Source: Parasitella parasitica NRRL 2501 (Eukaryota > Fungi > Mucoromycota). Taken from it: 34,134 nucleotides of DNA. The notes beneath the pieces were generated by a model. The model did not search any database. It was not told the origin of the DNA and saw nothing but the letters and a program-made list of their open reading frames with translations. A program made the position numbers and the translations under genes. The stretch lies in assembly GCA_025201805.1 (NCBI GenBank), contig MU619330.1, forward strand, positions 93,641 through 127,774, given 5' to 3'. Positions 1,550 through 27,720 of this stretch are shown piece by piece; the stretch's first letter is position 1, and each line of letters starts with the position of its first letter.

Positions 1550-1851
1550 ATTCAAAAGCGTAAAAATCAATTCCGTTTTTCGAGATTTTCTCGCCCAAAA
1601 ATTTGTATTTTTTGGCCAAACAAAAACCATTACGTAGCTATGTTGTAGCTTTATTTTTGTATTACTATATCATATATCTTTAAATACCATTTATTGCTCT
1701 GAAAGTTATGAAAATAAATTAAGCGTCTGCTAAAAACATAAGAGAAAAAAATTTTTTTTTACCCATTCATTTAAAAACTAATACATCTACTAGAGAATCA
1801 AGTTTTAAAAAGATTTTAATAATACCTCAAGCCAAAGTGTCTTAGTGGTTT

Positions 1852-2346
1852 NNNNNNNNNNNNNNNNNNNNNNNNNNNNNNNNNNNNNNNNNNNNNNNNN
1901 NNNNNNNNNNNNNNNNNNNNNNNNNNNNNNNNNNNNNNNNNNNNNNNNNNNNNNNNNNNNNNNNNNNNNNNNNNNNNNNNNNNNNNNNNNNNNNNNNNNN
2001 NNNNNNNNNNNNNNNNNNNNNNNNNNNNNNNNNNNNNNNNNNNNNNNNNNNNNNNNNNNNNNNNNNNNNNNNNNNNNNNNNNNNNNNNNNNNNNNNNNNN
2101 NNNNNNNNNNNNNNNNNNNNNNNNNNNNNNNNNNNNNNNNNNNNNNNNNNNNNNNNNNNNNNNNNNNNNNNNNNNNNNNNNNNNNNNNNNNNNNNNNNNN
2201 NNNNNNNNNNNNNNNNNNNNNNNNNNNNNNNNNNNNNNNNNNNNNNNNNNNNNNNNNNNNNNNNNNNNNNNNNNNNNNNNNNNNNNNNNNNNNNNNNNNN
2301 NNNNNNNNNNNNNNNNNNNNNNNNNNNNNNNNNNNNNNNNNNNNNN
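1852..2346. other. Assembly gap (495 N)
   Basis: Run of N. Smaller gaps lie at 20796-20805 and 27761-27790, each next to a poly-T tract. Confidence 1.
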
Positions 2347-2509
2347 GTGGTATTTATGATTAAGAGGCATTTATTTAACCAAGTCATGAAGCTACATAAA
2401 AATAGCTTCTGAAGTTATATTTTACAGCATCTTGGCTATTGATTTATGTTAAGACATTACCACATTTCTTAAGGAGTTCATGTTTTGCTCCTCAATTGAA
2501 ATAGGTGTT

Positions 2510-2900
2510 TCACTGCTAAAGGCTAGTATTTGCAGTGGTGAATTCAAGCTCAGAAATATGTTTCCATTGCAACTTGCGCACATCCCAGAAATAAGAAGTA
2601 TAATATTGCACATGTTTCCTTAATTATTTTTTTGAGTGTTTAAATTTTGCATCAAACAATAATATACAGTGTATTAGGCTTTAAAAACACCTTTTCATAT
2701 TCCAAATAGCCGTCTTTTTGCATTTTTGGACCTTTTTGTTTCGCATTAAATACTAACGCATTGAGTTGACCAAACAATCCATCACATCAAAATTTTGATT
2801 ATATCCATAGTTTTACTATTTTCAAAAATAATAACTGAAATCTCGTGCTGACTGAAATGAAAATCCCGTCTGTTTTTTTTCTTATGATTGTAGTGGTGGA
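2510..2900 (+). repeat. More diverged third copy (direct orientation) of the same repeat
   Basis: Shares colinear anchors with copy A: 'gtttccatt', 'aaacaccttttc(a/t)tat', 'tt(g/a)ac(c/a)aaacaatcc', 'aaatgaa'. Confidence 0.5.
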
Positions 2901-3149
2901 ATAGGTCATAAACTTAATTCTGGAACGTTTTAATGGAATAAAAGTTGAAATATACGTTTATTAACACAAAAATTGATTGGATATGCTGGATCAAAAAAAA
3001 GATAATAAAACCAAAGGTTAACGAGATACGACAACTTGAAGATACTTTATTTAAGATCTGCTGTTTATACTTTTTACAGCTACATAAATTTATGGTGACT
3101 TATTTGGATTACTAATTGACAAGACTAATTCACAGTGGCAATCTACTTG

Positions 3150-5187: not shown

Positions 5188-7169
5188 TTAATTATTTGCA
5201 CCCAGCTCTTCCATATCTTGTTCAGAGTAGCCAAGTAATGTCAAGACATATTTCAGACTCTTTTGATTAATTCTAGCCCTTGCTTGCTCTTGTACACGAG
5301 GTTTGGCATTGAAAGCAATACCGAGACTAGCCTTATTCAACATCCACAAATCATTGGCACCATCACCAACAGCAATAACTTGTTTCAAAGACAATCCTTC
5401 GGCTTGTGCAATGACATCCAATAACTCTGCTTTGCGGACTCCGTCCACAATGGGGCCAATTGTCTTACCAGTAAGCGTAAGCCCATCTGATGAAACCTCC
5501 AACTGATTAGCGAACGCATAATCCAAGCCCAATTCAGCTTTTACATAATGCGCTAGCGGCATAAAACCACCACTGATCACTGCTAATTTGAATCCAAGTT
5601 TCTTCAAAGCACGGCAAAGGAAACGTGCCCCCTCGGTAAATGTAAGTATTTGCTTGACGTTCTCCAGCACGCCTACACTTGTACCATTTAGAAGAGCAAC
5701 ACGACGACGCAAAGATTCTTTGAAATCAATTTCACCATTCATGGCAGCTTCAGTGATAGCCTGTATTTCACGTAAAAATGAACCTCGTTTCCCCAAACTC
5801 TTTAAAAATAATTACTTACAGAGACCTGATCGACTACACCAGCATATCTTGCAATCTCATCAATAACTTCTTGATAAATCAGCGTAGAATCCATATCAAA
5901 CACCACCAGTCTCTTGTTTTTTCTGTACACATCATCCCGTTGGAAAGCAATGTCAGTGCCATAACTTGTAGATAGGCCAATTAATTCTGTACGCAGTGCA
6001 CTCATATCCATCCCACGAGGCACACTTAAGCGAAGATCAGCACAGGAAAGCTTGTCGTTGTCTCTATTTAAACGAATCATCTTTTCCACGGAGATACGGT
6101 GCTTCAGCAAGAGATGCGTCCATTCGCTCAAAAAGGTGGAATTGAGGCCATTCTGATTCAAGATAGTTGCAGCATACTTGATGCGTTCAGAGTAGGGAGC
6201 CTCTTCCAAGGAAGAGGGGATATAAACAGGTGTGTTTGTGGTAGACGAAGCGGGTGTATGTTTCTCTTTCTTGATCTTTTCCTTTTGCTCACGGATCAAT
6301 GGCTCTGTTGCTTGTGAATCGGGGATATCGTATGTTAAGGTAGCATCCCACTTTTGAGCAGCCTCAGCCAAATCACGGAATACAGCCACATTATCAGATT
6401 GCAGTGTAATCAGCACACCAAATGTAACATTGTGATAAAGACGAGAGAGCATGAAATCATCAATGCCACAAGGATGGCGGGCAAGGCAATCAAGCACAGC
6501 TCCTACAATATCTGTACCATGAGGGCCAGATAAAGATACCAATACTTTTTGATTTGGGCCAAGAAATGTGGGGGGTAAAGCAGAAGAAGGATTGACTTGA
6601 GATGAACGACTTCTGACCATAATGGGAGATGGTTTACTGACAGGAGGTTGGTTGTTCAACTTGTTCATGACACTGCGTTTCAATAGAGTCAATGCTTCGG
6701 CTTTCACCAAGGGTGACGCAGCTACTCGTTGAAGGTAAGGTTCGGATAATGCCAAGCCTGAATGGCGGTCGTTTTTCTTGAGAATTTTAGCGATGCCAGT
6801 GTAATTTAAAAAGACAAATCTCTCCAATGTGATGATTTTTTTGAGCAAATCCATTGCTGCTTCATTTGTTGAGTCATTGGTTGCTGACGATGTGAGGGAT
6901 TGAGTCTCTTTTTCAAAAAATTTAGTGGCTCTCTCTACCTGAGCATCTAGCTTTTCGATAAATACAACCTCGCACTTCTGCAGTTGGCCAAGTCTCTCGG
7001 AAACTAGCTGTGCAAATGGCTGTTGTTTTTGTGAATTTTCTAGTTTAATCGAATGCGAATACACTTCTGATTTCAAAAAGGATTTCAGGCTGTTGTAGTC
7101 GATGCAGTTCTCCGAATACTCTGCTGGCAATTGAGATTTCCTCTCTTCAAGATAGTTGCCAAATTTCAT
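5188..7169 (-). CDS. serB: SPX-domain / tandem-ACT / HAD phosphoserine phosphatase (SerB-type) fusion, 640 aa; exons 7169-5820 and 5760-5188
   Basis: ATG at 7169 gives the SPX-typical start MKFG, then CIDYNSLK and LNYTGIAKILKKNDR (SPX ligand-binding clusters). ACT-like segments KVLVSLSGPHG...VTFGVLITL and KYAATIL...DIAFQ follow. HAD motif I FDMDSTL (5883-5897), motif II ISGGF, motif III K (RKAELL) and motif IV GDGANDL are present. A 59-nt GTAAGT...CAG intron (5819-5761) joins VDQVS|AITEAAMNGEIDF in frame. Confidence 0.93.
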
Positions 7170-7254: not shown

Positions 7255-7261
7255 TGAGTCA
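7255..7261. promoter_or_regulatory. Candidate Gcn4/CpcA (AP-1-type) element TGAGTCA upstream of the SPX-SerB gene
   Basis: Perfect TGA(C/G)TCA core (ATGAGTCAA) ~90 bp upstream of the ATG at 7169. It is appropriate for an amino-acid biosynthesis gene, but function is not demonstrated. Confidence 0.45.
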
Positions 7262-8335: not shown

Positions 8336-8878
8336 TTATAGCGATGTGCTGTTGATGCGTAAAGAGCTAGTACGACCCCAGACAAAGTCATCTTGCCTTT
8401 TGGATAAACAAGAGCGTCTTGGTCTAAGTGATCTTGTGATTTTAGAAGCACGGATCATGTTCAGTTCCGTTGATAGAATTCGCAAAGTGCTTCCATTGGT
8501 TCGTGAGCCTCTCAGGTATGCATGCGACTCTGTCCATGCTGGTCTTTTGGGCTGTTGTGCAGCTGGTGGATCCTTTATTTCAATTGCATTTGGGATGCTT
8601 GGTTGGAGGGGTCCGATCATGCAACAGTTATTTTGGAGTAGTAGTGACAAATCGATAGGTGGTTTTTGTCGCAGTGGTAATATACATGGTTGGGTGTTAG
8701 ATAAAAGTAGCTGTGTTGTAGTTTGTGCGGGTGTGATAGTTGCCATGGTGATGCTTGACGATTTGATTGGATTTAAGTTGGTTATCGACGCCACGGAAGA
8801 TGATTTTTTGAAGATAAATGAAGAGAGCAACTGCAAAGTGTTTGTATGTACATTGATGTAAGAAAATAAAGGGTCCAT
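8336..8878 (-). CDS. Hypothetical small basic protein (true start may be the ATG at 8746, 136 aa)
   Basis: Open 180-codon ORF with TATA-like ATATAAATA at ~8951-8959 on the minus strand. Low-complexity N-terminus and an Arg-rich C-terminal block (YLRGSRTNGSTLRILSTELNMIRASKITRSLRPRR...RQDDFVWGRTSSLR) that resembles, from memory and unverified, small Mucorales hypothetical proteins. Confidence 0.65.
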   Translation of the reverse strand: MDPLFSYINVHTNTLQLLSSFIFKKSSSVASITNLNPIKSSSITMATITPAQTTTQLLLSNTQPCILPLRQKPPIDLSLLLQNNCCMIGPLQPSIPNAIEIKDPPAAQQPKRPAWTESHAYLRGSRTNGSTLRILSTELNMIRASKITRSLRPRRSCLSKRQDDFVWGRTSSLRINSTSL

Positions 8879-13348: not shown

Positions 13349-16300
13349 ATGGCATTCAAGTTAAACACAATTGAAATCAGGTTCGATAAAGTATACAACA
13401 ATGGATTCCACTCGTTGCAACAATTCGAAATAAGCAACTTGACAAACCAAAATCAACACATACGACTTGATTCAGGTGCTTTAAATGAGCAGGTCGTTTT
13501 TCAGCTTCAAAACGAAAATATCAACGAGACAACGACTAAAGCGTTTGCAACAAACACAGCAACCACGCCGCAAGACTTTTCTCGATTTAATCAAGTATTC
13601 AATTACGTAAATCATATCGATAGCATTGACTTGGAACCACTGCAAACATTGCCTTTTATTATCGCATTCATACCCGAGGTAACCAAGAAGCAAATATATA
13701 CCAAAATATCTGGAAATGTTCAATTTACTGCGATGGATTATACTTTGGACATTGATTTTCATGCTACCGTGTGTCAATCTGTTTTAGTAGCCGACGAACT
13801 AGATACAGGACTTATCTTTGAGGACAGTATCGTTGGAGAAACCTATATCAAAGATGTTACCATCCGTAATCGTTCGGCTATCGATCTTCACTGGCGATTG
13901 AATACATTGGATCTGAATCGACAACAACAACAATATGGCATTGGCGCTGATGATTGGCTGCAGTTTGTAGATGCATGCACATTCACAACTCTGGGATCAC
14001 CAATGTCGATCGCCCCTTTTTCAATATATACGTTTAGAGTTGTATTCACACCAAAAGAAGTGGGAAAGTTCAACTACGACCTTCAGATTGAAAACATCAA
14101 CGACGTTCAAAATATCGTTCAGACCAAAATTCATGCAACGACAAAGAGATTCATGCACAGAGAGACCCTGGTGGTTAAAAGTGGTAATATTTTGGATTTT
14201 GGGGATTGCATTTCTGGAAATTGGTCAATGCAGCAGATAGTGTTGAGTAACGTAAGTGAAGCATCGATTGAAGTACATTTTAGTGTTGAAGGAGGGGTCG
14301 AAATGGCATTCAATGTGAAAGCGAAACCAGAGGACGGGGAGGACGAGCGTGATGATGTGATAAGAAGCAACATGGCAAATATAGCGACCAACACCAGCAT
14401 TTTTGAAAAACACTTACCGATACCGCAATCGTCTATTACGCCAGAGAGCTTATTCACAAGACCAGATTCACCCAGCATATCTCACAAGACTTTTTCATCT
14501 CAGGAAGATGCATCGTCTACTAATTCCTATGCTTCGACAGGTACTATACACGACATTAAATATACCAAGTGCACATAGTCTAACAATTTGGCAAACTATA
14601 GATGTAGACATTGATATGTGGACAGCTTTCAACGAAATGTATTCGTACAATACCAGTTCCTTATCAGTGACAAGACAAAGCCAAGAATTAGAAGGAAATA
14701 CTACCAATATCGAAGACATTGTCCTGAAACCTGGTTCTGAAAAGACCATTCAAGTCTCTTACCGGCCATCAAAATCAGAGCTCAAGAGTGTCAATGCAGG
14801 TCAATTAATTGCACAAAACAATTTCGGCATCTTACTAGTATATCGCCCCAATAAAACGTCCAAGCCCAAAGAGCTCAAGTTGATTCAGTGCAAAGCGAAA
14901 ACATGCACCTCGTTTGTGAGCGTGACGCCTCAGACGGTTGATTTTGGAGACACCAACGTTGGGGCGCAGAAATCACAATCTATATCCATAACAAACCTAT
15001 CAGAAATATGCGCACACGTCGAGTTAGTGTTTGAATCCAAAGTTATCAGTTGCACTCAGGGCGAGTTGCTGATCCAACCGAAAAGTACGATGGAACTTAA
15101 ACTAGACATTTACCCAAGAAAAATCAACACTTCCTACAAAAGACAGATCAAGCTGGTCAACTACCTGAATCGAGACAACGACCAAATTATAGAGGTCTAC
15201 AGCAAAAACGTCGATAACCATAAAGTTACTTTTCATTCATTGTTCTATCAGCTATTGACTCCCACTGGTGCCAATTTTTTAGATTTCGGTCCTATTGCAC
15301 TCAACTCACCAGCTATTCGCACCTGCACTTTGATCAATGTCAAAGATGCACCCTTATTACTAGGCATTTCGACGTCGTTACCCGAGGAAATTGTGATATA
15401 CACAAAGAAGAAAAGATACAATCCGAGAAAACTACTGTCTATTACGCCCTCATCCTCAACTCTTCAGTGTTTTGAAAAAGATATAGAGAAGCAATCGTCA
15501 GTCGTGACCAACACTTTGATTGCGATGAACCACCGCACCCGCATGACAAACGTACAGTATACTTCCACTGCTTATTTGGATCTAGCTACTGTGCCACATG
15601 TTAGGTTGACATCTACCAAACAGCAAAGAATGGCTGTAGCAAGACGATTGTTGCAGGGCAAATCCATATACGAGGCATCAGCTTCAACAGACGCTCCAGC
15701 AACCGAGGAAACAGAACTATCGGCTGAGACTGCCCCCAACAAGCCGTCTTTTGCTACTAGCCAAGAGTTACTGGCTCAAAAACACAACAAAAAGAAAAAA
15801 GAACAACAACACTACCATCGTGATCAGCAAGGCCTAGAACGTAACTGTACAGGCATAACAGGAACTGCTCACCATTTGAAAAAGAAGCAAAAGAAGATCG
15901 ACTGGCCTGATATTGCAGGCAAATCGCAAGTACCTTTAGATGACCTCATTTCAATCCTGGAGTATGGCTCATTATCTAGGACGCCGCTGTTTGCAAAGCA
16001 ATCATCAGAAGAGCAGTTTGTGAGATACCAATTAGCCTGGCGCACAGAATTGGACAGACTGATTGAAAAGGGGGAACTAGTGCCGACATCCCTTCTACAA
16101 CTAGACGCTAAAGAGGAAATCGAAGTCGTCATTGTATATACGCCAAACCAAGACCATTGGCAATCCTCTTTAACAACCAAAAAGGCAGCAGCTCTATCGA
16201 TTCGTCTGATTGATTTTGACCATTCGTCGGACGATGATGAAGAGTCAAACGCTGGTAGAAAAATCCCTGTTGTGCGAAAGGTGATTGTGCGTGCTCAAGT

Positions 16301-17291
16301 GTGCAAATCATCCATGGAGGTTGGTCAGCGCAACATCAACTTTGGGATTGTCGAAAAAGGGGAAAGACACCATAAAACGATTGTGCTTCACAATAAATCA
16401 GAAACGCCATTGCTGTATACTATTAAGAAATCAGGCTCGATTGCGTCCGGTACCATTCATTTCGATGTAGGAAAGCATGGCGTAATTCGAGCATTTGGAA
16501 AACGAGAAATCAGCTTTGTATTTGTGCCGACGCTACACGGTGCATTCATGGAGCAATTGACTGTAAGTAATATTCGAGATAAAAAAGACACCAATGTGAT
16601 TTCCCTCAAGGCAATGGTGCGTCGTTCCGAGTCCTTTCTCGTCAAGGCTTTACACGAGCCGCTGAGTATCCATCCTTATTGCATGTCTACGAGCTTTGAA
16701 GTACTGCACATTACAAATACAAATCCGCAATCTAGGTCTTTTGAAATACGAATCGATAATAATGAAGGGGTTGAAGATTATCATGTGGAATTCGGTGTTG
16801 TTCGTCAAAACGCATCGTTGATGCGTAGCGAAGAACTCGAAGAGGAGATAGAAACAATCGAACAAAAACTGAAAATAGCTTTGCGCAAAGCACAGCCGGA
16901 TAAGGTCAAAAAGTACAACAAAAAGCTGGCTAAATTGAGGCAAGCTGAGCAGATTGTTCAAATCAAAGATGATACCGCGCAACAAATAGAGGATATCGAA
17001 GAAAAGCGGTTCGATAAAAAAGAAAATGCCGAGTTATTAGAATTGAATGAATCGGACACATCGACATTAGCTTTGACTACGAAAAAGCTAGATGACTATA
17101 GCATGCTGTTTACAATTGAATCTAATACCTCGATCCATGTTATAATGTGTTTCAGAGCTTATAAATCAACTGCAACAACTAGCCGTTTACTCGGCCGTAT
17201 CTTGGTCCATGAGCACAAGAATCTAGATATTATTAAATCGTTTCCATTCTCTGCCATCTTGTGCACAACCCATGGATCCTGTCTCGTATAG
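13349..17291 (+). CDS. Large protein with tandem Ig-like ASH (ASPM-SPD-2-Hydin)/PapD-like domains, 1293 aa; exons 13349-14540 and 14602-17291
   Basis: Two long ORFs are joined in frame by a 61-nt GTACTA...CTAAC...TAG intron (ST|DVDIDM). Recurrent motif [IVL]-[DN]-F-G followed by x-[IL]-x-[IL]-x-N: LIFEDSIVG..VTIRN, ILDFGDC..IVLSN, VDFGDT..ISITN, FLDFGPI..TLIN, INFGIV..IVLHN. Each is followed by V-x-F/Y-x-P strands. Confidence 0.88.
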
Positions 17292-21138: not shown

Positions 21139-23436
21139 ATGTCTGTAGCCATGGCAACCACACCTATAGATCAAGTTGGTCTTACAGATAATGAAACTCA
21201 AAAATTATTTCAATCTCACAGCTCTCTATCAGAGACAGATCTACTCCATCTGTTTACAACAATCACCCAGCAAATTTCAAATTGGCTGCAGTCGATCCAT
21301 CTATCTGTATTTACTCTAAAGCAAAATGTACAGATGCAGCATGTGCAAATGCAAGATCTGGAGCCTTTGGAATCAGCAATGGAAAGGCTGGAGCCGTATA
21401 TTGACACATTGCTGGAAATCAGAGAGCTAATATCGACCAGCAATGCCTACATGACGACCACCAAAATCCAGTCGGAATGGTCAAGTTTACAGCATTTTTT
21501 GGAGGCTGTGAAGAAGCTAGTAATAACATCTCAGGAAACACACTCTGTAGCATTAAATTTGAACCAGCTCCTTGTCCAAATGGATGATGTATCAATCCTG
21601 CTGTTTGAATTTCAGGAGAAGAAACATCATGCAGCTGTGCCGACGTCATCTCTATCGGAAAAGGCCGGTAGTGAAAGCACAAACAGCTTCTACAGTGATA
21701 GCGAGCCCACAAAGCATAAAGACGACCAAGCAATGGCGGATCTGGAAGCAGTATTTGAGCCCTTATTCAACGCTATGGAACACATGTACCACCGCATGGC
21801 GCAACAGGATGATCCGGTTTTACAAAAGCGGTTCGAGAAAGTGAAAGCGAAATGGGAATCATTGCAGTTCGACCGGGACGAGCTGAAATGGGAGCACAAA
21901 GAAGATCGCTGGCTGACGGTATTCAGAAAAGTGTCGGATCAGGTTGATGTGATGATTGATGGGTTAGACCGCTCAGTAGTGCAATGCTACTCTTTAATCC
22001 AGCATGTACGAGATTGGCAGGCTACCCACTTTCCAGCAACGCCTACATCCACCTTTGACAAGTTTTCCAAATCGCTTCGCTTGCATCCCAACATAACCCC
22101 ACCAAACTCACCCCCACCAGTTGACAAAGACAAATTCAGATCGGTTGAAAAGAGCTTTGAGGCCAAATACAAGTACTACACGCCTAGCATTGACCGCATG
22201 CTAGGTATGCTTGGCAACGGCATTTCCGCTAGAGCATCACGAGACAATCAGACATCACAACGCCATGAATCCATGCTGCAGAGATGGCATCATCTAAAAG
22301 AAGTAATGGACGAGCTACGGATGCGAGATTTAATAGAAACCAAGCGCATGTTGGCGTCATGCTCATCCATGTCATCAGCATCCAGCAGCCCAACTGACAC
22401 CAATAGCAACGACAGTCGGTGGCGCGGTGTCCGCTACCGCACACCAGAACCGTCTAGTGAAAGACAAGAATGGGGGCGTGTACGTAGTGTTACTCCAAAT
22501 CATGCGTTTGGTCGCTCCTCGCCCCGGAAGAGCATACCAAACAGCCCACAAACAGAGTATTATCAGCAATCTCTGCTAAGGGGCAGTGTATCCGACTCGT
22601 CATCTGTTGGATCATCCCCACCGCCCAAACGCCAAACTAAAACCCCAAGGCCCACAAGAAACAGCAGTACGTTAACAGCACGGAAAGAAGATTTCTACGA
22701 TGCAGACGAAAGAGATTATGGCATAGATATAATGAAACTAAGCCGAGGCAATACAACTACAAACAAAAGGCCACCCAGCAGCATAGGAGCGCGACCAGCC
22801 ACAGTTGCTGCCGCTGCCGCAGGGCCAAGGTCCAAGACGCCTAACCCACCCACTTACAAACGCCCAGCAGTAGGAGCAGGTGCTGCAAGATGTCGAAGCA
22901 GTATGGGAGACATATCCACACGGTCAATGTCACCTAGCCTCAGCAAACGCTCTGTCACACCGTCATTGATACCCAGGCCAAAGACACCCACCAGCCGTTA
23001 TAGTCAGCAACAAAGACCACCACCTGTCCCACCTCTACCCAAATATGCCAGCCATAGAAAACCAGAAATAACCATTCGAGAGGATTATACTTACTTTGCA
23101 GATCCAAAAGATGCTCTGGACGTGGAAGTAGCGGCTATTGTAAACGCAAGCCCGATATCCATAGAGTGCCAACGAGCGCAGCCTGGACGCTATTATTTTG
23201 GCAGTGAGCTGAGCATGTCGACTATGGGAGGTAAAAAGATGTACACTTGCAAACTAATGACTTATGAGGACCGGAGGGGAGGCAAATATAAGAATAACAA
23301 GGTCCTGATTCGTGTTGGTGGAGGGTGGCAAGATCTGGAGTTCTTTTTACTAGAGCATAGTTCGTTGATGGCCAGTGATGTCGTTGTACGATCTTTTGGT
23401 GCAACGGGTAACACAAATCATGGCTGGCGAAATTAA
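21139..23436 (+). CDS. Kar9-like coiled-coil protein with C-terminal GAS2/GAR microtubule-binding domain, 765 aa
   Basis: Intronless ORF. Helical N-terminal half with EDRWLTVFR..DQ and SFEAKYKYY resembling fungal Kar9/MigA family motifs, an S/P/R-rich disordered middle with SLIP (SxIP), and C-terminal GRYYFG...KVLIRVGGGWQDLEFFL, the GAS2 signature. Confidence 0.88.
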   Translation: MSVAMATTPIDQVGLTDNETQKLFQSHSSLSETDLLHLFTTITQQISNWLQSIHLSVFTLKQNVQMQHVQMQDLEPLESAMERLEPYIDTLLEIRELISTSNAYMTTTKIQSEWSSLQHFLEAVKKLVITSQETHSVALNLNQLLVQMDDVSILLFEFQEKKHHAAVPTSSLSEKAGSESTNSFYSDSEPTKHKDDQAMADLEAVFEPLFNAMEHMYHRMAQQDDPVLQKRFEKVKAKWESLQFDRDELKWEHKEDRWLTVFRKVSDQVDVMIDGLDRSVVQCYSLIQHVRDWQATHFPATPTSTFDKFSKSLRLHPNITPPNSPPPVDKDKFRSVEKSFEAKYKYYTPSIDRMLGMLGNGISARASRDNQTSQRHESMLQRWHHLKEVMDELRMRDLIETKRMLASCSSMSSASSSPTDTNSNDSRWRGVRYRTPEPSSERQEWGRVRSVTPNHAFGRSSPRKSIPNSPQTEYYQQSLLRGSVSDSSSVGSSPPPKRQTKTPRPTRNSSTLTARKEDFYDADERDYGIDIMKLSRGNTTTNKRPPSSIGARPATVAAAAAGPRSKTPNPPTYKRPAVGAGAARCRSSMGDISTRSMSPSLSKRSVTPSLIPRPKTPTSRYSQQQRPPPVPPLPKYASHRKPEITIREDYTYFADPKDALDVEVAAIVNASPISIECQRAQPGRYYFGSELSMSTMGGKKMYTCKLMTYEDRRGGKYKNNKVLIRVGGGWQDLEFFLLEHSSLMASDVVVRSFGATGNTNHGWRN

Positions 23437-23894: not shown

Positions 23895-26800
23895 ATGTCG
23901 CAGCCTCAATCACAGCAGCATCTGCAAACTCAACAGCCCGTCCGCGAGCACTCTGTTGAGACTATTCGGAGAAATAGCGAGGTGATGGGTAACCTTCGCA
24001 AACTGATGGTTGCAAACCGTGGCGTAAGTATTGCGCATCAGTCCGGATGTCAGATCGAGATAACAATTGTGCTGTTACACTAGGAAATTGCTATTCGTTG
24101 TTTCCGCACAGCACACGAGCTGTCCATGAGAACCGTCGCCGTCTTTTCTAATGAGGACAGATTGTCTATGCATCGTTACAAGGTAAGTCCAAAGAATATG
24201 TGTGTGTTTGTGTTTTTTTTTTTTCATTAATGCATATGCTTACAAAGGCCGATGAATCCTATCAAATCGGTCAACTAGGCCAGTTTACTCCTGTAGGCGC
24301 CTACTTGGCTCAGGATGAAATCGTAAGAATCGCAAAGGAAAGAAACGTATCCATGATCCATCCAGGCTACGGCTTTTTGTCTGAAAATGCCGAATTTGCG
24401 CGTAAAGTCGAAGCTGCTGGCATCACATTTATCGGCCCTTCTGCCGACGTGATTGACAGTTTGGGTGACAAAACCAAGGCACGAACAATCGGTAAGTCGG
24501 GAGAATTGCGTGTATAATCGATGTGTCCTAAATGCGCACACACACACACACCTGTTAAATAGCCATGAATTGCGATGTACCTGTGGTACCTGGCACTCCT
24601 GGACCCGTTAGCGATTATGCACAAGCAAAGCAATTTATCGACGAATACGGGTTCCCCATCATCATCAAAGCTGCTATGGGCGGCGGTGGCCGCGGCATGC
24701 GTGTTGTGCGTGATTTTGAATCGTTTGAAGACTCCTTCAACAGAGCTAAATCCGAAGCCCTGTCTGCATTTGGCGACGGCACTGTCTTCATTGAGCGTTT
24801 CCTTAATAGACCTCGCCACATTGAGGTGCAACTGTTGGCTGATCGTGCCGGTAACGTTGTCCATTTGTTTGAGCGCGATTGTTCTGTTCAACGTCGCCAT
24901 CAAAAGGTAGTTGAAATTGCCCCTGCCAAAAACTTGGACAACAAATGTCGCGAAGCCATTCTGGCCGATGCTATCAAGATTGCCAAGGCTGTCAAGTATA
25001 AGAATGCAGGCACCGCTGAATTCTTGGTCGACGACCAAAACCGCCATTACTTCATTGAAATCAACCCTCGTATTCAAGTCGAGCACACCATCACCGAAGA
25101 GATTACGGGCATTGACATTGTGGCTGCCCAAATTCAGATTGCTGCTGGTGCTCTGCTGCCTCAACTAGGTTTGACCCAACAGCGTATTCGTCAAAGAGGT
25201 TACGCAATCCAGTGTCGCGTTACCACAGAGGACCCTGAAAAGGGGTTCCAGCCTGATACAGGTAAGATTGAGGTGTATCGATCTTCAGGCGGAAATGGCG
25301 TGCGTTTGGATGGTGGTGCTGGCTTTGCTGGTGCTGTCATTACCCCTTACTACGATTCCTTACTGGTCAAAGTTACCTGCACAGGTTCGACTTACGAAGT
25401 CGCCCGTAGAAAGGTTGTGCGTGCCCTAGTGGAGTTCCGTATACGTGGCGTCAAAACCAACATTCCGTTCTTGCAGCGTTTAGTTACGTACCCAACCTTT
25501 ATGACGGGCAACTGCTGGACTACCTTTATCGATGACACTCCCGATCTGTTTGAGCTTGTGCAGTATCAGAATCGTGCTCAGCGTATGTTGGGCTACTTGG
25601 GTGATGTTATTGTCAATGGGTCTCAGGTAAAGGGCCAAGTAGGCGAGCCTACATACAAGCATGAGATCGATGTCCCTGTGCTGGTTGATGCACAAGGAAA
25701 TGACATCGACCCAAGTACGCCTGCTCCCGAGGGCTGGCGCAAGGTTTTGCTGGACCAAGGTCCTGACGGTTTTGCAAAGGCTGTCCGTGCTCATCCCGGC
25801 GTCTTGATCATGGATACTACATGGCGTGATGCTCATCAAAGTTTACTAGCTACTCGTGTTCGCACCATCGACTTGTTGCGCATTGCTCCGACTACTGCTC
25901 ATGGTCTTTCTAACGCTTTTTCACTGGAATGTTGGGGTGGCGCTACCTTTGACGTCTCTATGCGTTTCTTGCACGAGGATCCCTGGGACCGTCTCATGAA
26001 GCTGCGTAAGGCCGTGCCCAATATTCCATTCCAAATGTTGCTCCGTGGCGCCAATGCTGTGGGATACACATCCTATCCAGATAACGTTGTCTACGAGTTT
26101 TGCGACAAGGCCGTCAAGGCCGGTATGGACATCTTCCGTGTGTTTGATTCTCTTAATTATGTCGAAAACATGAAGCTGGGTATTGATGCTGTCAAGAAGG
26201 CTGGCGGTGTTGTTGAGGCCAGCATCTGTTACACTGGAGATGTGTCGGACAAGACTCGTACAAAGTACACACTGGAATACTATGTCGATTTGGCTCAGCA
26301 ATTAGTTGATGAGGGTATCCATATATTGGGCATTAAGGACATGGCAGGTTTATTGAAGCCTGCGGCTACAACGCTGTTGGTCAGCACATTGCGTGAAAAG
26401 TTCCCTGAAATCCCTATCCATCTCCATACTCATGATACTGCTGGCACTGGTGTTGCTTCAATGATGGCTGCTGCAGCTGCAGGTGCCGATATCGTTGACG
26501 CTGCCATTGACTCCATGTCTGGCATGACTTCTCAGCCTGCCATGGGTGCACTTGTAGCTGCTCTAGAGCAAACCAATATGGGTACCGGCATCAGTATGGA
26601 AAATGTGCATGCTCTCAATTCATACTGGGAACAGGCTCGCCTCTTGTACTCTTGCTTTGAAGCCAATGTTAAATCTGCGGACTCTGGTGTTTATGATCAT
26701 GAAATGCCTGGCGGTCAATACACCAACTTGATGTTCCAAGCTCAACAATTGGGCCTAGGCACTCAATGGATCCAAATCAAAAAAGCGTATGCTGAAGCGA

Positions 26801-27720
26801 ACAAACTATGTGGCGATGTTGTCAAGGTTACTCCATCCTCTAAGGTCGTTGGTGATTTGGCCCAATTCATGGTATCCAATGGTCTCTCAGGCAAAGACGT
26901 TGAGGAGCGTGCTTCCTCCTTGTCATTCCCTACGTCCGTCATAGAGTTCTTCCAAGGTTATTTGGGCCAGCCTTATCATGGTTTCCCAGAGCCATTGCGA
27001 TCCAATATCATCCGCGATTTACCTCCCATCAACGGTCGTCCTGGCGCTACTTTACAACCCTTGGACCTTGGACAACTTAAAGCTGAATTAACCGCCAAGT
27101 ACGGCAATAATATCCGAGATTACGACGTTATCTCTGCTGCACTGTATCCTCGCGTGTTTGCTGATTATCGCGATACTGTCAGTCAATTTGGTGATTTATC
27201 AGTCATCCCCACTCGCTACTTTTTATCCAAGCCTGAGATTGGAGAAGAATTCCAAGTAGAGATTGAAGAAGGCAAGACTTTAATCATCAAGATGTTGGCT
27301 GTCGGTCCATTGAATGCCACTGGTAAGCGCGATGTCTACTTTGAGTTGAATGGTGAAGCGCGTGTTGTTGGTATCGTTGATACAAATGCTGGTAAGCTGA
27401 GGATATTTGCATATAATACCTGCGCTATTAACTCACTAGGGCATTTTTCTTTTTTAGCTGTTGAGGTTGTTACTCGTGAAAAAGCTAATCCTGGAAAGCC
27501 TGGTGATGTTGCAGCTCCCATGTCTGGTGTAGTTATCGAGGTCAAGGCTAAAACAGGACAATTGGTCAAGGCTGGCGAACAACTTGCAGTGTTGAGTGCC
27601 ATGAAGATGGAAACTGTTGTCACTGCTCCTATTTCAGGCAGAATTGATCGTGTTGTCGCTCAGACTGGGGATTCTTTGAATTCTGGTGATCTAGTTTTCC
27701 AAATCGTCAAAGAAGAGTAA
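23895..27720 (+). CDS. PYC: Pyruvate carboxylase, 1187 aa; exons 23895-24023, 24084-24182, 24248-24491, 24563-27391, 27458-27720
   Basis: Biotin carboxylase motifs VANRG|EIAIR, HPGYGFLSEN, GGGGRGMR, ERDCSVQRRHQK. Carboxyltransferase motifs DTTWRDAHQS, ECWGGATFD, HLHTHDT. Biotinyl motif AMKM. All introns are GT-AG and the exon total (3564 nt) is a multiple of 3. Confidence 0.98.

What the first reader, a model, noticed from the sequence alone, without database searches (positions are those of the whole stretch)
5188..7169. SPX-ACT-ACT-phosphoserine phosphatase fusion: candidate inositol-pyrophosphate control of serine biosynthesis
Seen: SPX hallmarks (MKFG start; Y25/K29 in IDYNSLK; K-x-x-K-K-x-D-R cluster with only a conservative K-to-R change) lie in the same exon as two ACT-like domains and HAD motif I, so the fusion is not a gene-model artefact. 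All SerB catalytic motifs are intact. Established: SPX domains bind inositol pyrophosphates and report phosphate status in Vtc2/3/4/5, Pho81, Pho87/90/91, Syg1/XPR1 and Gde1, while SerB releases Pi in the last step of serine synthesis. Inference: this enzyme could couple Pi release and serine/one-carbon flux to phosphate status, integrating PP-InsP (SPX) and amino-acid (ACT) signals in one polypeptide. I know of no characterised SPX-SerB protein, though such architectures may exist uncharacterised in databases.
Basis: partly seen in the sequence, partly recalled or inferred. Interest (0 to 1): 0.82.

Follow-up and report, generated by a model that had tools for sequence, protein, structure and literature searches.

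The report
SPX-sensor fused phosphoserine phosphatase, Mucor
This Mucor gene encodes the fungus's only detectable phosphoserine phosphatase, fused to an intact SPX domain (the module that senses cellular phosphate status); the fusion is ancient, conserved across almost all non-Dikarya fungi, and unstudied, and it points to direct phosphate-status control of serine synthesis.

Summary
A two-exon gene on the minus strand (exon 1 7169..5820, 59-nt GTAAGT..ACAG intron, exon 2 5760..5188) encodes a 640-aa protein. Its order is SPX (1-170), disordered linker, ACT1, disordered insert, ACT2, then a SerB-type HAD phosphatase.

- **SPX domain:** it passes Pfam's cut-off, matches solved SPX structures by sequence, and folds confidently (pLDDT 94) into a model whose listed PDB matches (E below about 0.1) are all SPX domains.
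- **Ligand-binding residues:** the six inositol-polyphosphate-binding positions (Y25, K29, K128, K131, K132, R135) are nearly invariant across 85 full-length orthologues. The rest of the domain is only about 59% conserved.
- **Range:** the architecture occurs in Mucoromycota, Zoopagomycota, Chytridiomycota, Neocallimastigomycota, Blastocladiomycota and an aphelid. It is decaying in Taphrinomycotina (Saitoella, Neolecta) and was not seen in other Dikarya.
- **Transcripts:** intron-less, transcript-sized contigs from a relative carry SPX through HAD in one ORF.
- **Genome context:** this is the only SerB homologue found, and IPK- and PPIP5K-type kinase genes are present.

Databases already list these proteins as "phosphoserine phosphatase". 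I found no paper on the fusion. Regulation by inositol pyrophosphates is well motivated but untested, and its direction is unknown.

The parts
5188..7169 (-). Whole CDS of the SPX-ACT-ACT-SerB gene (640 aa plus stop; two exons)
   Evidence: The splice junction is identical to the annotated M. circinelloides orthologue P0001.
5820..7169 (-). Exon 1 (residues 1-450): SPX, linker, ACT1, insert, ACT2 and the start of the HAD domain including motif I
   Evidence: Single open frame. Pfam SPX and ACT_6 hits.
5761..5819 (-). Intron, 59 nt, GTAAGT...ACAG, phase 0
   Evidence: Gene calls on relatives' contigs stop just after VDQVS, reading into the same intron. Contigs L002/L003 lack the intron.
5188..5760 (-). 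Exon 2 (residues 451-640 plus stop): the rest of the HAD phosphoserine phosphatase domain
   Evidence: Pfam HAD 60.9 bits and Hydrolase 58.7 bits. In G000 it matches only its own locus.
6660..7169 (-). SPX domain (residues 1-170)
   Evidence: Pfam 34.6 bits, above the 27.8 cut-off. OsSPX2 7d3y E=3e-9 and ScVtc4 E=6e-6. AF2 pLDDT 93.9; Foldseek top hits are all SPX domains, XPR1 SPX TM 0.80.
7083..7097 (-). Y25...K29, equivalent to ScVtc4 Y22/K26 of the phosphate-binding cluster
   Evidence: Alignment to Vtc4. Y25 82/82 and K29 82/82 in full-length orthologues.
6765..6788 (-). KILKKNDR (residues 128-135), equivalent to ScVtc4 K127/K130/K131/K134, the lysine surface cluster plus the third phosphate-binding residue
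   Evidence: K128 84/84, K131 84/84, K132 85/85, position 135 R or K in 84/85.
6555..6659 (-). SPX-to-ACT1 linker (residues 171-205), with a flexible core
   Evidence: AF2 pLDDT below 50 for residues 174-195. Column conservation 0.51.
6324..6554 (-). ACT1 (about residues 206-282), beta-alpha-beta-beta-alpha-beta
   Evidence: Pfam ACT_6 at 209-278. Secondary structure. Foldseek match to M. avium SerB2.
6192..6323 (-). Disordered Ser/Thr/Pro/Lys-rich insert between the ACT domains (about residues 283-326)
   Evidence: pLDDT below 50 for residues 285-325. Conservation 0.47.
5934..6191 (-). ACT2 (about residues 327-412), beta-alpha-beta-beta-alpha-beta
   Evidence: Secondary structure. Its C-terminal part (from residue 377) aligns with M. 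avium SerB2 by sequence. Foldseek aligns the whole model over 439 columns.
5191..5933 (-). SerB-type HAD phosphatase domain (residues 413-640; interrupted by the intron)
   Evidence: The orthologue P0001 matches 3p96 at E=1.4e-60 and M. jannaschii PSP at E=1e-48. Catalytic motifs are invariant in 54 sequences.
5883..5897 (-). HAD motif I DMDST (residues 425-429; nucleophile D425)

Best explanation
This is the genome's single phosphoserine phosphatase, the last, Pi-releasing step of the phosphorylated serine pathway. It is built on the mycobacterial SerB2 plan: two ACT domains followed by a HAD catalytic domain. A complete SPX domain is tethered to its N-terminus by a disordered linker.

Shown here:
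- The fusion is real, and in a relative it is transcribed as one mRNA.
- The fusion is ancient, reaching from an aphelid through nearly all non-Dikarya fungal phyla.
- The SPX part has the SPX fold.
- The six residues that bind InsP6/PP-InsP in solved SPX domains are nearly invariant, although the rest of the domain drifts.
- The catalytic and substrate residues are invariant.
- The genome encodes IPK-family and PPIP5K-family kinase genes, the families that include the PP-InsP-synthesising kinases.

Inferred: the SPX domain binds InsP7/InsP8, which reports cytosolic Pi sufficiency. Through the adjacent ACT domains, which in SerB2 set oligomeric state and serine feedback, it changes PSP activity. 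One polypeptide would then integrate phosphate status and serine level.

The direction is not determined. My lean is weak, about 55:45. By analogy with the general logic of SPX proteins and with Gde1, another Pi-liberating hydrolase carrying SPX, I expect PP-InsP binding to restrain the enzyme. Loss of PP-InsP under Pi starvation would then release it, freeing Pi from the 3-phosphoglycerate pool. The opposite logic is also possible: PP-InsP could license serine supply for the P-consuming synthesis of nucleotides and phospholipids.
For: - Gene model and junction.
- Domains: Pfam SPX above cut-off, ACT_6 and HAD.
- SPX identity: sequence matches to solved SPX domains, and the alignment that maps Y25/K29/K128/K131/K132/R135 onto Vtc4 Y22/K26/K127/K130/K131/K134. 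The SPX-only AF2 model has pLDDT 93.9 and pTM 0.87, and every listed Foldseek PDB hit (E up to about 0.08) is an SPX domain, including InsP6- and InsP8-bound ones.
- Selection on the binding site: the six positions are at least 95% conserved in 85 orthologues, against a 0.59 mean for the domain. They also hold in Blastocladiomycota, Kickxellomycotina and the aphelid.
- Enzyme core: SerB2-like, E=1e-60 and Foldseek 1.6e-34. HAD motifs are invariant.
- Genome context: only one SerB-type locus in the 32.8-Mb genome; about 15-20 other SPX loci; three IPK-family and two PPIP5K-type loci.
- Transcripts: L002/L003, from two sequencing runs, are about 2.0 kb and lack the intron. One ends in adapter sequence. 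Each carries the uninterrupted 650-aa SPX-to-HAD ORF. Gene calls of relatives (jgi and Logan contigs) break at the intron.
- Concept: serine synthesis is described as a Pi-releasing 'source' reaction in PMC7864628.
Against: - No biochemical or genetic data exist for any member, and none was found in the literature searches.
- Position 135 is R rather than the canonical K. This is conservative, and K occurs in Glomeromycotina and others.
- The AF2 full-length model (pTM 0.60) gives no confident SPX-enzyme interface, so an intramolecular allosteric route is not demonstrated.
- PSP is not the committed step of the pathway in many organisms, so control at this step may matter less for flux than assumed.
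- Most Dikarya evidently manage without the SPX part.
Confidence: 0.6

Rival explanations
1. The SPX domain acts outward rather than on the enzyme. As in plant SPX1-PHR, it would bind a partner (a transcription factor, kinase inhibitor or membrane complex) in a PP-InsP-dependent way. It would thereby localise or sequester either the partner or the phosphatase, and PSP catalysis itself would be insensitive to PP-InsP.
For: The best sequence matches among solved structures are the stand-alone plant SPX1/SPX2 proteins, which work by binding PHR factors. The long disordered linker and the low inter-domain confidence (pTM 0.60) fit a domain that is free to reach other proteins.
Against: A fusion kept for the whole history of Fungi in the sole PSP gene is more simply explained by regulation in cis. 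No partner is known. The ranking of PDB hits reflects only which SPX structures happen to exist.
Confidence: 0.2
2. The SPX domain is a structural or oligomerisation appendage, or an evolutionary relic. It would stabilise the enzyme or assemble multimers without carrying a phosphate-status signal.
For: Taphrinomycotina show that the domain can decay. Saitoella has K29 replaced by T and falls below the Pfam cut-off. Neolecta has lost the N-terminal hairpin and part of the lysine motif. Other Dikarya were not seen with SPX. SPX domains do dimerise in some solved structures: entries titled with asymmetrically dimerised SPX domains appear.
Against: The ligand-contacting residues specifically are the most conserved positions of a domain that otherwise drifts. 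A scaffold role would not select for an exposed Tyr/Lys cluster across the whole family (five fungal phyla plus an aphelid).
Confidence: 0.12
3. The HAD domain has a different or additional substrate, such as phosphoproteins, as claimed for M. tuberculosis SerB2 (my recollection, not checked here), or inositol pyrophosphates. The SPX domain would then recruit the substrate rather than sense it.
For: HAD phosphatases are often promiscuous. SPX would bring PP-InsPs close to a phosphatase active site.
Against: The catalytic domain is highly similar to bona fide SerB enzymes (E=1e-60 to 1e-48). The PSP-type motif and substrate-pocket residues are invariant. It is the only SerB homologue in the genome, so it must supply PSP activity if the phosphorylated pathway operates.
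Confidence: 0.05

Closest known systems
Mycobacterial SerB2 (M. avium 3p96/5is2; M. tuberculosis SerB2): ACT-ACT-HAD phosphoserine phosphatase
   Same: It has the same three-domain enzyme core. The sequence match is E=1.4e-60 over the end of ACT2 plus the HAD domain. Foldseek gives E=1.6e-34 and TM 0.73 relative to the target, over 439 columns. The catalytic motifs are identical.
   Different: SerB2 has no SPX domain and no disordered insert between the ACT domains. The fungal protein adds about 205 N-terminal residues (SPX plus linker).
Gde1 (S. cerevisiae / Chaetomium): SPX-ankyrin-GDPD glycerophosphodiesterase
   Same: It is the one well-known case of SPX fused to a soluble hydrolase of organic phosphate metabolism. 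Its SPX domain (5ijj) is a structural match (TM 0.65).
   Different: It has a different catalytic fold (GDPD rather than HAD) and ankyrin spacers instead of ACT domains. It acts in phospholipid-derived P scavenging, not amino-acid biosynthesis.
Vtc4 (SPX-TTM polyphosphate polymerase)
   Same: SPX is N-terminal to a catalytic domain whose activity PP-InsPs switch. The six binding residues align one to one.
   Different: Vtc4 belongs to a membrane complex and is a Pi sink. PSP is soluble and a Pi source, so the sign of regulation may be opposite.
Plant stand-alone SPX1/SPX2 (7e40, 7d3y)
   Same: They are the best sequence matches among solved SPX domains (E=3e-9 and 1.5e-7).
   Different: They have no enzymatic domain. 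They act by PP-InsP-dependent binding of PHR transcription factors.
S. cerevisiae Ser2 / human PSPH
   Same: They catalyse the same reaction with the same HAD subfamily. The orthologue P0001 matches human PSPH at E=6e-19.
   Different: They are short enzymes without SPX (from my own knowledge; yeast Ser2 is about 309 aa). The model fungi therefore gave no hint of this regulation.

Membership tests
SPX domain (Pfam PF03105) | Profile match above the curated cut-off | tested here: met
   34.6 bits against 27.8, two stretches covering the N-terminal hairpin and helix alpha4.
SPX domain (Pfam PF03105) | SPX fold: N-terminal helical hairpin plus a long three-helix bundle and C-terminal helices | tested here: met
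   AF2 pLDDT 93.9, with helices 3-12, 16-20, 25-39, 52-98, 102-137, 142-150 and 158-169. All listed Foldseek hits are SPX domains; XPR1 SPX TM 0.80.
SPX domain (Pfam PF03105) | Phosphate-binding cluster (Vtc4 Y22, K26, K131) and lysine surface cluster (K127, K130, K134) | tested here: met
   Y25, K29, K132; K128, K131, R135 (K replaced by R, conservative). Nearly invariant across 85 orthologues.
SPX domain (Pfam PF03105) | Binding of InsP6/PP-InsP | not testable with these tools
   Needs ITC or MST with purified protein.
SerB-type phosphoserine phosphatase (HAD superfamily) | HAD motifs I-IV (DxDST, S/T, K, GDGxND) | tested here: met
   D425-M-D-S-T429, S513/G514, K560 and G582-D-G-A-N-D587 are all invariant in 54 sequences and align with M. 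avium SerB2.
SerB-type phosphoserine phosphatase (HAD superfamily) | Close homology to experimentally solved PSPs, including the substrate-pocket residues | tested here: met
   E=1.4e-60 (3p96) and 1.3e-48 (M. jannaschii 1f5s). E434, M457, F463 and R470 are invariant. Their mapping to MjPSP E20/M43/F49/R56 is from my memory of that structure.
SerB-type phosphoserine phosphatase (HAD superfamily) | Phosphoserine hydrolysis, or complementation of serB/ser2 | not testable with these tools
   Only circumstantial: it is the sole SerB homologue in G000.
SerB2-type ACT-ACT-PSP architecture | Two beta-alpha-beta-beta-alpha-beta ACT domains N-terminal to the HAD domain | tested here: met
   Pfam ACT_6 at 209-278. 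Both beta-alpha-beta-beta-alpha-beta units appear in the AF2 model. Whole-core Foldseek match to SerB2. ACT2 is not detected by Pfam in this protein.
SerB2-type ACT-ACT-PSP architecture | L-serine binding at the ACT domains, with feedback inhibition | not tested
   The serine-contact residues of 5jlp were not mapped.

The most novel reading that the evidence does not exclude
Inositol-pyrophosphate/SPX signalling directly gates an amino-acid biosynthetic enzyme. In the common ancestor of Fungi and aphelids, the sole phosphoserine phosphatase became a phosphate-status-controlled valve between glycolytic 3-phosphoglycerate, free Pi and serine/one-carbon metabolism. This valve persists in most fungal phyla, including mucormycosis agents and arbuscular mycorrhizal fungi. 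It was lost on the way to the Dikarya model fungi, which is why it was never noticed.
Probability: 0.5. Interest if true: 0.75.

Novelty: new variant of a known kind. Interest (0 to 1): 0.62.

Why it matters
To my knowledge, every characterised SPX protein moves, stores or signals phosphate: Vtc, Pho81, Pho87/90/91, Syg1/XPR1/PHO1, Gde1, and plant SPX, SPX-MFS and SPX-RING. An SPX domain with an intact binding site on the only phosphoserine phosphatase would extend PP-InsP control into central carbon and amino-acid metabolism.

It would also give a simple, soluble, assayable read-out for SPX allostery: a colorimetric Pi-release assay.

The fusion is present in the AM fungi that feed phosphate to plants (Rhizophagus) and in Mucorales pathogens. 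It is absent from humans: the human PSPH structures hit are 220-225 residues, too short to hold an SPX domain. It therefore bears on mycorrhizal P economy and could offer a fungus-specific regulatory site. Its decay in Taphrinomycotina and its absence from the other Dikarya examined give a natural comparative experiment.

Tried and rejected
- **Literature.** Seven full-text searches found nothing on this fusion: SPX domain with phosphoserine phosphatase, SerB, haloacid dehalogenase, ACT domain, serine biosynthesis, Rhizophagus, and Rhizophagus plus phosphoserine. One search was badly framed (min_terms 2) and was uninformative. The AM-fungus nutrient-signalling survey PMC8401276 lists SPX transporters and VTC but not this protein.
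- **Earlier findings of this scan.** Blank by place and by words.
- **Whole-protein Foldseek.** It returned only SerB/HAD hits, because those domains dominate. I therefore folded and searched the SPX part alone.
- **ESM Atlas.** It returned only two fungal PSP clusters and bacterial ACT-SerB clusters, with no structure search.
- **Promoter motifs.** There is no CACGTK (Pho4/NUC-1-type) site in the 5' region of the gene. One TGAGTCA lies about 90 nt upstream of the ATG, but the window total of 5 equals chance (5.35 expected), so no regulatory claim is made.
- **Gene-model artefact.** Rejected. SPX, both ACT domains and HAD motif I lie in one exon, and the architecture recurs in independently annotated genomes.
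- **Relic SPX.** Rejected as the main reading, because of the selective conservation of the binding residues.
- **Sanchytrium homologue (P0155, 652 aa).** It has a long N-terminal extension, but neither phmmer nor Pfam detects SPX in it. This is unresolved.
- **Exon-by-exon rule.** The joined 640-aa model of the window gene was never sent to any database tool. Exons were searched by reference, and full-length work used the annotated orthologue P0001. One local script did concatenate the last 35 residues of exon 1 with exon 2 as a local phmmer query, to label HAD presence in fetched proteins. That departed from the exon-by-exon instruction. No conclusion depends on it, because HAD presence is shown independently.
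Full report
**1. What is in the sequence**

On the minus strand, one open frame runs from the first ATG at 7169 (MKFG...) down to 5820. It continues, after a 59-nt intron with canonical GTAAGT...ACAG ends (5819..5761), in a second exon from 5760 to 5188. This gives 450 + 190 = 640 codons.

The exon junction (VDQVS|AITEAAM) is identical to that of the annotated Mucor circinelloides protein P0001. P0001 is 640 aa, is 94% identical to exon 1, and is named 'Phosphoserine phosphatase' by NCBI. The window therefore comes from a Mucor close to M. circinelloides. The assembly is 32.8 Mb in 450 contigs.

I did not submit the joined model to any database tool. Full-length analyses used the natural orthologue P0001. 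One local script did join the tail of exon 1 to exon 2 for a local domain-labelling phmmer run. That was a lapse against the instruction, and nothing below depends on it.

**2. Domain anatomy**

Pfam finds SPX (PF03105, 34.6 bits against a 27.8 cut-off, two stretches) and ACT_6 (residues 209-278) in exon 1. It finds HAD/Hydrolase (about 60 bits) in exon 2.

AlphaFold2 on P0001 with 54 orthologues (mean pLDDT 82.6) gives this layout:
- an all-helical N-terminal domain (residues 1-171);
- a disordered linker (174-195, pLDDT below 50);
- a beta-alpha-beta-beta-alpha-beta unit (208-281, ACT1);
- a disordered insert (285-325);
- a second beta-alpha-beta-beta-alpha-beta unit (329-411, ACT2);
- a Rossmann-like HAD domain (about 413-640).

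The C-terminal 430 residues superpose on Mycobacterium avium SerB2, the ACT-ACT-PSP enzyme (Foldseek E=1.6e-34, TM 0.73 of the target). They match it by sequence at E=1.4e-60. HAD motifs I-IV and the pocket residues are invariant in 54 orthologues: D425/D427, S513/G514, K560, GDGAND 582-587, plus E434, M457, F463 and R470.

**3. Is the N-terminus really an SPX domain with a working binding site?**

- *By sequence.* Residues 1-160 match solved SPX domains: rice SPX2 (E=3e-9), rice SPX1, Chaetomium and yeast Vtc4 (about 1e-6 to 6e-6) and human XPR1 (1e-4).
- *Residue mapping.* The Vtc4 alignment places Y25, K29 and K132 on the phosphate-binding cluster (Y22, K26, K131). It places K128, K131 and R135 on the lysine surface cluster (K127, K130, K134).
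- *By structure.* Folded alone with 38 orthologues, the domain gives pLDDT 93.9 and pTM 0.87. Every hit Foldseek listed (E up to about 0.08) is an SPX domain: XPR1 (TM 0.80, including the InsP8 complex 8tyv), OsSPX1, CtVtc4-InsP6, CtGde1-InsP6 and ScVtc4.
- *By conservation.* Across 85 full-length orthologues, the mean conservation of the commonest residue in the SPX region is only 0.59, against 0.87 in the HAD domain. Yet the binding positions barely vary: Y25 is 82/82, K29 82/82, K128 84/84, K131 84/84, K132 85/85, and position 135 is R or K in 84/85. M1-K2-(F/Y)3-G4 is likewise kept. This pattern is what selection for ligand binding predicts. A relic or a mere scaffold would not show it.

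**4. How widespread, how old**

The word-indexed search with exon 1 returned 1,619 hits. The top 120 are SPX+ACT_6+HAD proteins of about 620-725 aa, or truncated calls of such proteins. They come from:
- Mucorales, Umbelopsis, Endogone and Jimgerdemannia;
- Glomeromycotina (Rhizophagus, Diversispora, Ambispora, Geosiphon);
- Mortierellomycotina;
- Basidiobolus and Thamnocephalis;
- Spizellomycetales and Rhizophlyctis chytrids;
- Piromyces.

The exhaustive search of 50%-identity representatives found only 25 clusters below 1e-30. Naming them added Coemansia and Smittium (Kickxellomycotina), Catenaria and Sorochytrium (Blastocladiomycota), Caulochytrium and, unexpectedly, Saitoella (Taphrinomycotina, Ascomycota).

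A search seeded with the Saitoella protein added three things:
- Syncephalis;
- a 653-aa SPX+ACT+HAD protein whose EukProt record prefix 'Partr' I read, from memory, as the aphelid Paraphelidium tribonemae;
- Neolecta.

Apart from Saitoella itself and Neolecta, that search listed no Dikarya protein among its best 120. The Saitoella enzyme is thus closer to those of AM fungi than to any other ascomycete PSP in the listing.

In Saitoella the lysine motif survives, but K29 is T and Pfam falls below its cut-off. In Neolecta the N-terminal hairpin and part of the K-I-L-K-K motif are deleted.

The simplest history is a fusion before the fungal radiation, retention with an intact site in all the major non-Dikarya phyla sampled here, and decay or loss within Dikarya. 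The absence from other Dikarya is inferred from ranked lists, not from an exhaustive census. The Sanchytrium homologue has an N-terminal extension without detectable SPX.

**5. Is it expressed as a fusion?**

Two Logan contigs from different runs (SRR14532558 and SRR14532556; L002 and L003, 2,058 and 2,014 nt) carry an uninterrupted 650-aa SPX-to-HAD ORF that is 81% identical to ours. Each has only 37-49 nt before the SPX ATG and a short 3' tail, and L002 ends in Illumina adapter sequence.

At the position of our intron they read straight through (...GTATCT|GCTATT...). In contrast, about a dozen gene calls from relatives' contigs (jgi and Logan) end a few codons after VDQVS, reading 'VS...' into a GTAAGT-type intron. 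One of these is 93% identical to the Logan protein.

These contigs are therefore most likely spliced mRNAs that begin upstream of SPX. I could not check the library type of the runs, and I have no RNA data for this species itself.

**6. Genomic context relevant to function**

Exon 2 (the HAD part) finds only its own locus in the whole genome, so this is the only detectable SerB/PSPH-type enzyme. The genome holds some 15-20 other SPX loci, three IPK-family kinase genes and two PPIP5K/Vip1-type loci. The kinase families that make InsP7 and InsP8 are therefore represented.

The neighbouring genes are unrelated: an ASH/Cep192-like Ig-repeat protein, a KAR9/GAS2 protein and pyruvate carboxylase.

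**7. Mechanism**

Shown: the points in sections 1-6.

Established from the families (my knowledge, plus the entry titles):
- SPX domains bind InsP6/PP-InsPs on the basic surface formed by these residues, and they transmit Pi status to the attached or bound effector.
- SerB2's ACT domains control oligomeric state and serine feedback.
- PSP releases Pi in the last step of serine synthesis. PMC7864628 describes serine synthesis as a Pi-releasing reaction among its examples of metabolic Pi sources.

Inferred: PP-InsP occupancy of the tethered SPX domain alters PSP activity, probably through the adjacent ACT module. The enzyme would then integrate phosphate status and serine level.

I put 0.6 on this. 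The direction is open, with a weak lean towards inhibition by PP-InsP and activation on Pi starvation, by analogy with other Pi-supplying SPX proteins.

The rivals are:
- SPX as a partner-binding or localisation module (0.2);
- a non-signalling structural or oligomerisation role (0.12);
- a different substrate (0.05).

**8. Comparison and novelty**

The enzyme core is a member of the SerB2-type PSPs. The N-terminus is a member of the SPX family. All the defining features that I could test for either family are met.

The combination is recorded in sequence databases: NCBI and UniRef name it 'phosphoserine phosphatase', and SPX, ACT_6 and HAD are precomputed in Pfam. Seven literature searches and one targeted reading found no description or experiment.

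I class it as a new variant of a known kind. The sensor is known, and it is attached to a new class of effector, an amino-acid biosynthetic enzyme. The nearest precedent is Gde1 (SPX plus a soluble hydrolase).

Interest is moderate to high (0.62). The finding is solid, ancient and directly testable with a simple assay. However, it is visible to anyone browsing domain architectures, and its regulatory meaning is still hypothetical.

Noticed in passing
P0125 (Saitoella), P0286 (Neolecta); Two early-diverging ascomycetes keep the SPX-SerB gene, with the SPX part visibly decaying. Saitoella has K29 replaced by T and falls below the Pfam cut-off. Neolecta lacks the N-terminal hairpin and half of the KILKK motif. 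This is a natural series for studying loss of SPX control.
   Followed up: partly
P0308 (record prefix 'Partr', which I take from memory to be Paraphelidium tribonemae); What appears to be an aphelid protein (the sister lineage of Fungi; the organism is read from the EukProt record prefix) has the same SPX+ACT+HAD protein, with Y, K and KILKKHDK intact. The fusion would then predate the fungal radiation.
   Followed up: partly
P0155 (Sanchytrium tribonematis, 652 aa); This homologue has an N-terminal extension of about 190 aa before ACT1 in which neither phmmer nor Pfam finds SPX. It may be a highly diverged SPX or a different domain.
   Followed up: no
L002:2035-2058: The Logan contig ends in Illumina TruSeq adapter sequence (AGATCGGAAGAGCACACGTCTGAA), so untrimmed adapter is present in a public assembly. 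The 5' ends of L002 and L003 also differ upstream of a shared ATATAATC just before the ATG.
   Followed up: no
window 7255-7261: A TGAGTCA (Gcn4/AP-1-type) site lies about 90 nt upstream of the start codon. The window-wide count equals chance (5 against 5.35 expected), and there is no CACGTK site in the 5' region.
   Followed up: partly
window 13349-17291 (+): Two overlapping large ORFs carry ASH / Cep192-D4 / HYDIN-CFAP65-like Ig domains. These families are usually tied to centrosomes and cilia, yet this is a non-flagellated Mucor. They are probably one intron-containing gene.
   Followed up: no
window 24565-27720 (+): This is a pyruvate carboxylase gene (CPSase_L_D2, Biotin_carb_C, HMGL-like, PYC_OADA, biotinyl domains). 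The N-terminal biotin-carboxylase part must lie in upstream exons.
   Followed up: no
window 21139-23436 (+): A KAR9-like protein with a C-terminal GAS2 domain. The 22-23 kb segment is unusually GC-rich (0.51) with a strong AT skew (0.275).
   Followed up: no
window 1816-2387 and 2001-3000: A very AT-rich stretch (GC 0.197), with ORFs of about 180 aa open on both strands. It is probably low-complexity intergenic DNA. ORFs are similarly open on both strands at 8336-8878.
   Followed up: no
window 6192-6323 (-), residues 283-326: The disordered Ser/Thr/Pro/Lys-rich insert between ACT1 and ACT2 is absent from bacterial SerB2. It varies in sequence and length among the fungal orthologues and could be a phosphorylation or interaction site.
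   Followed up: no
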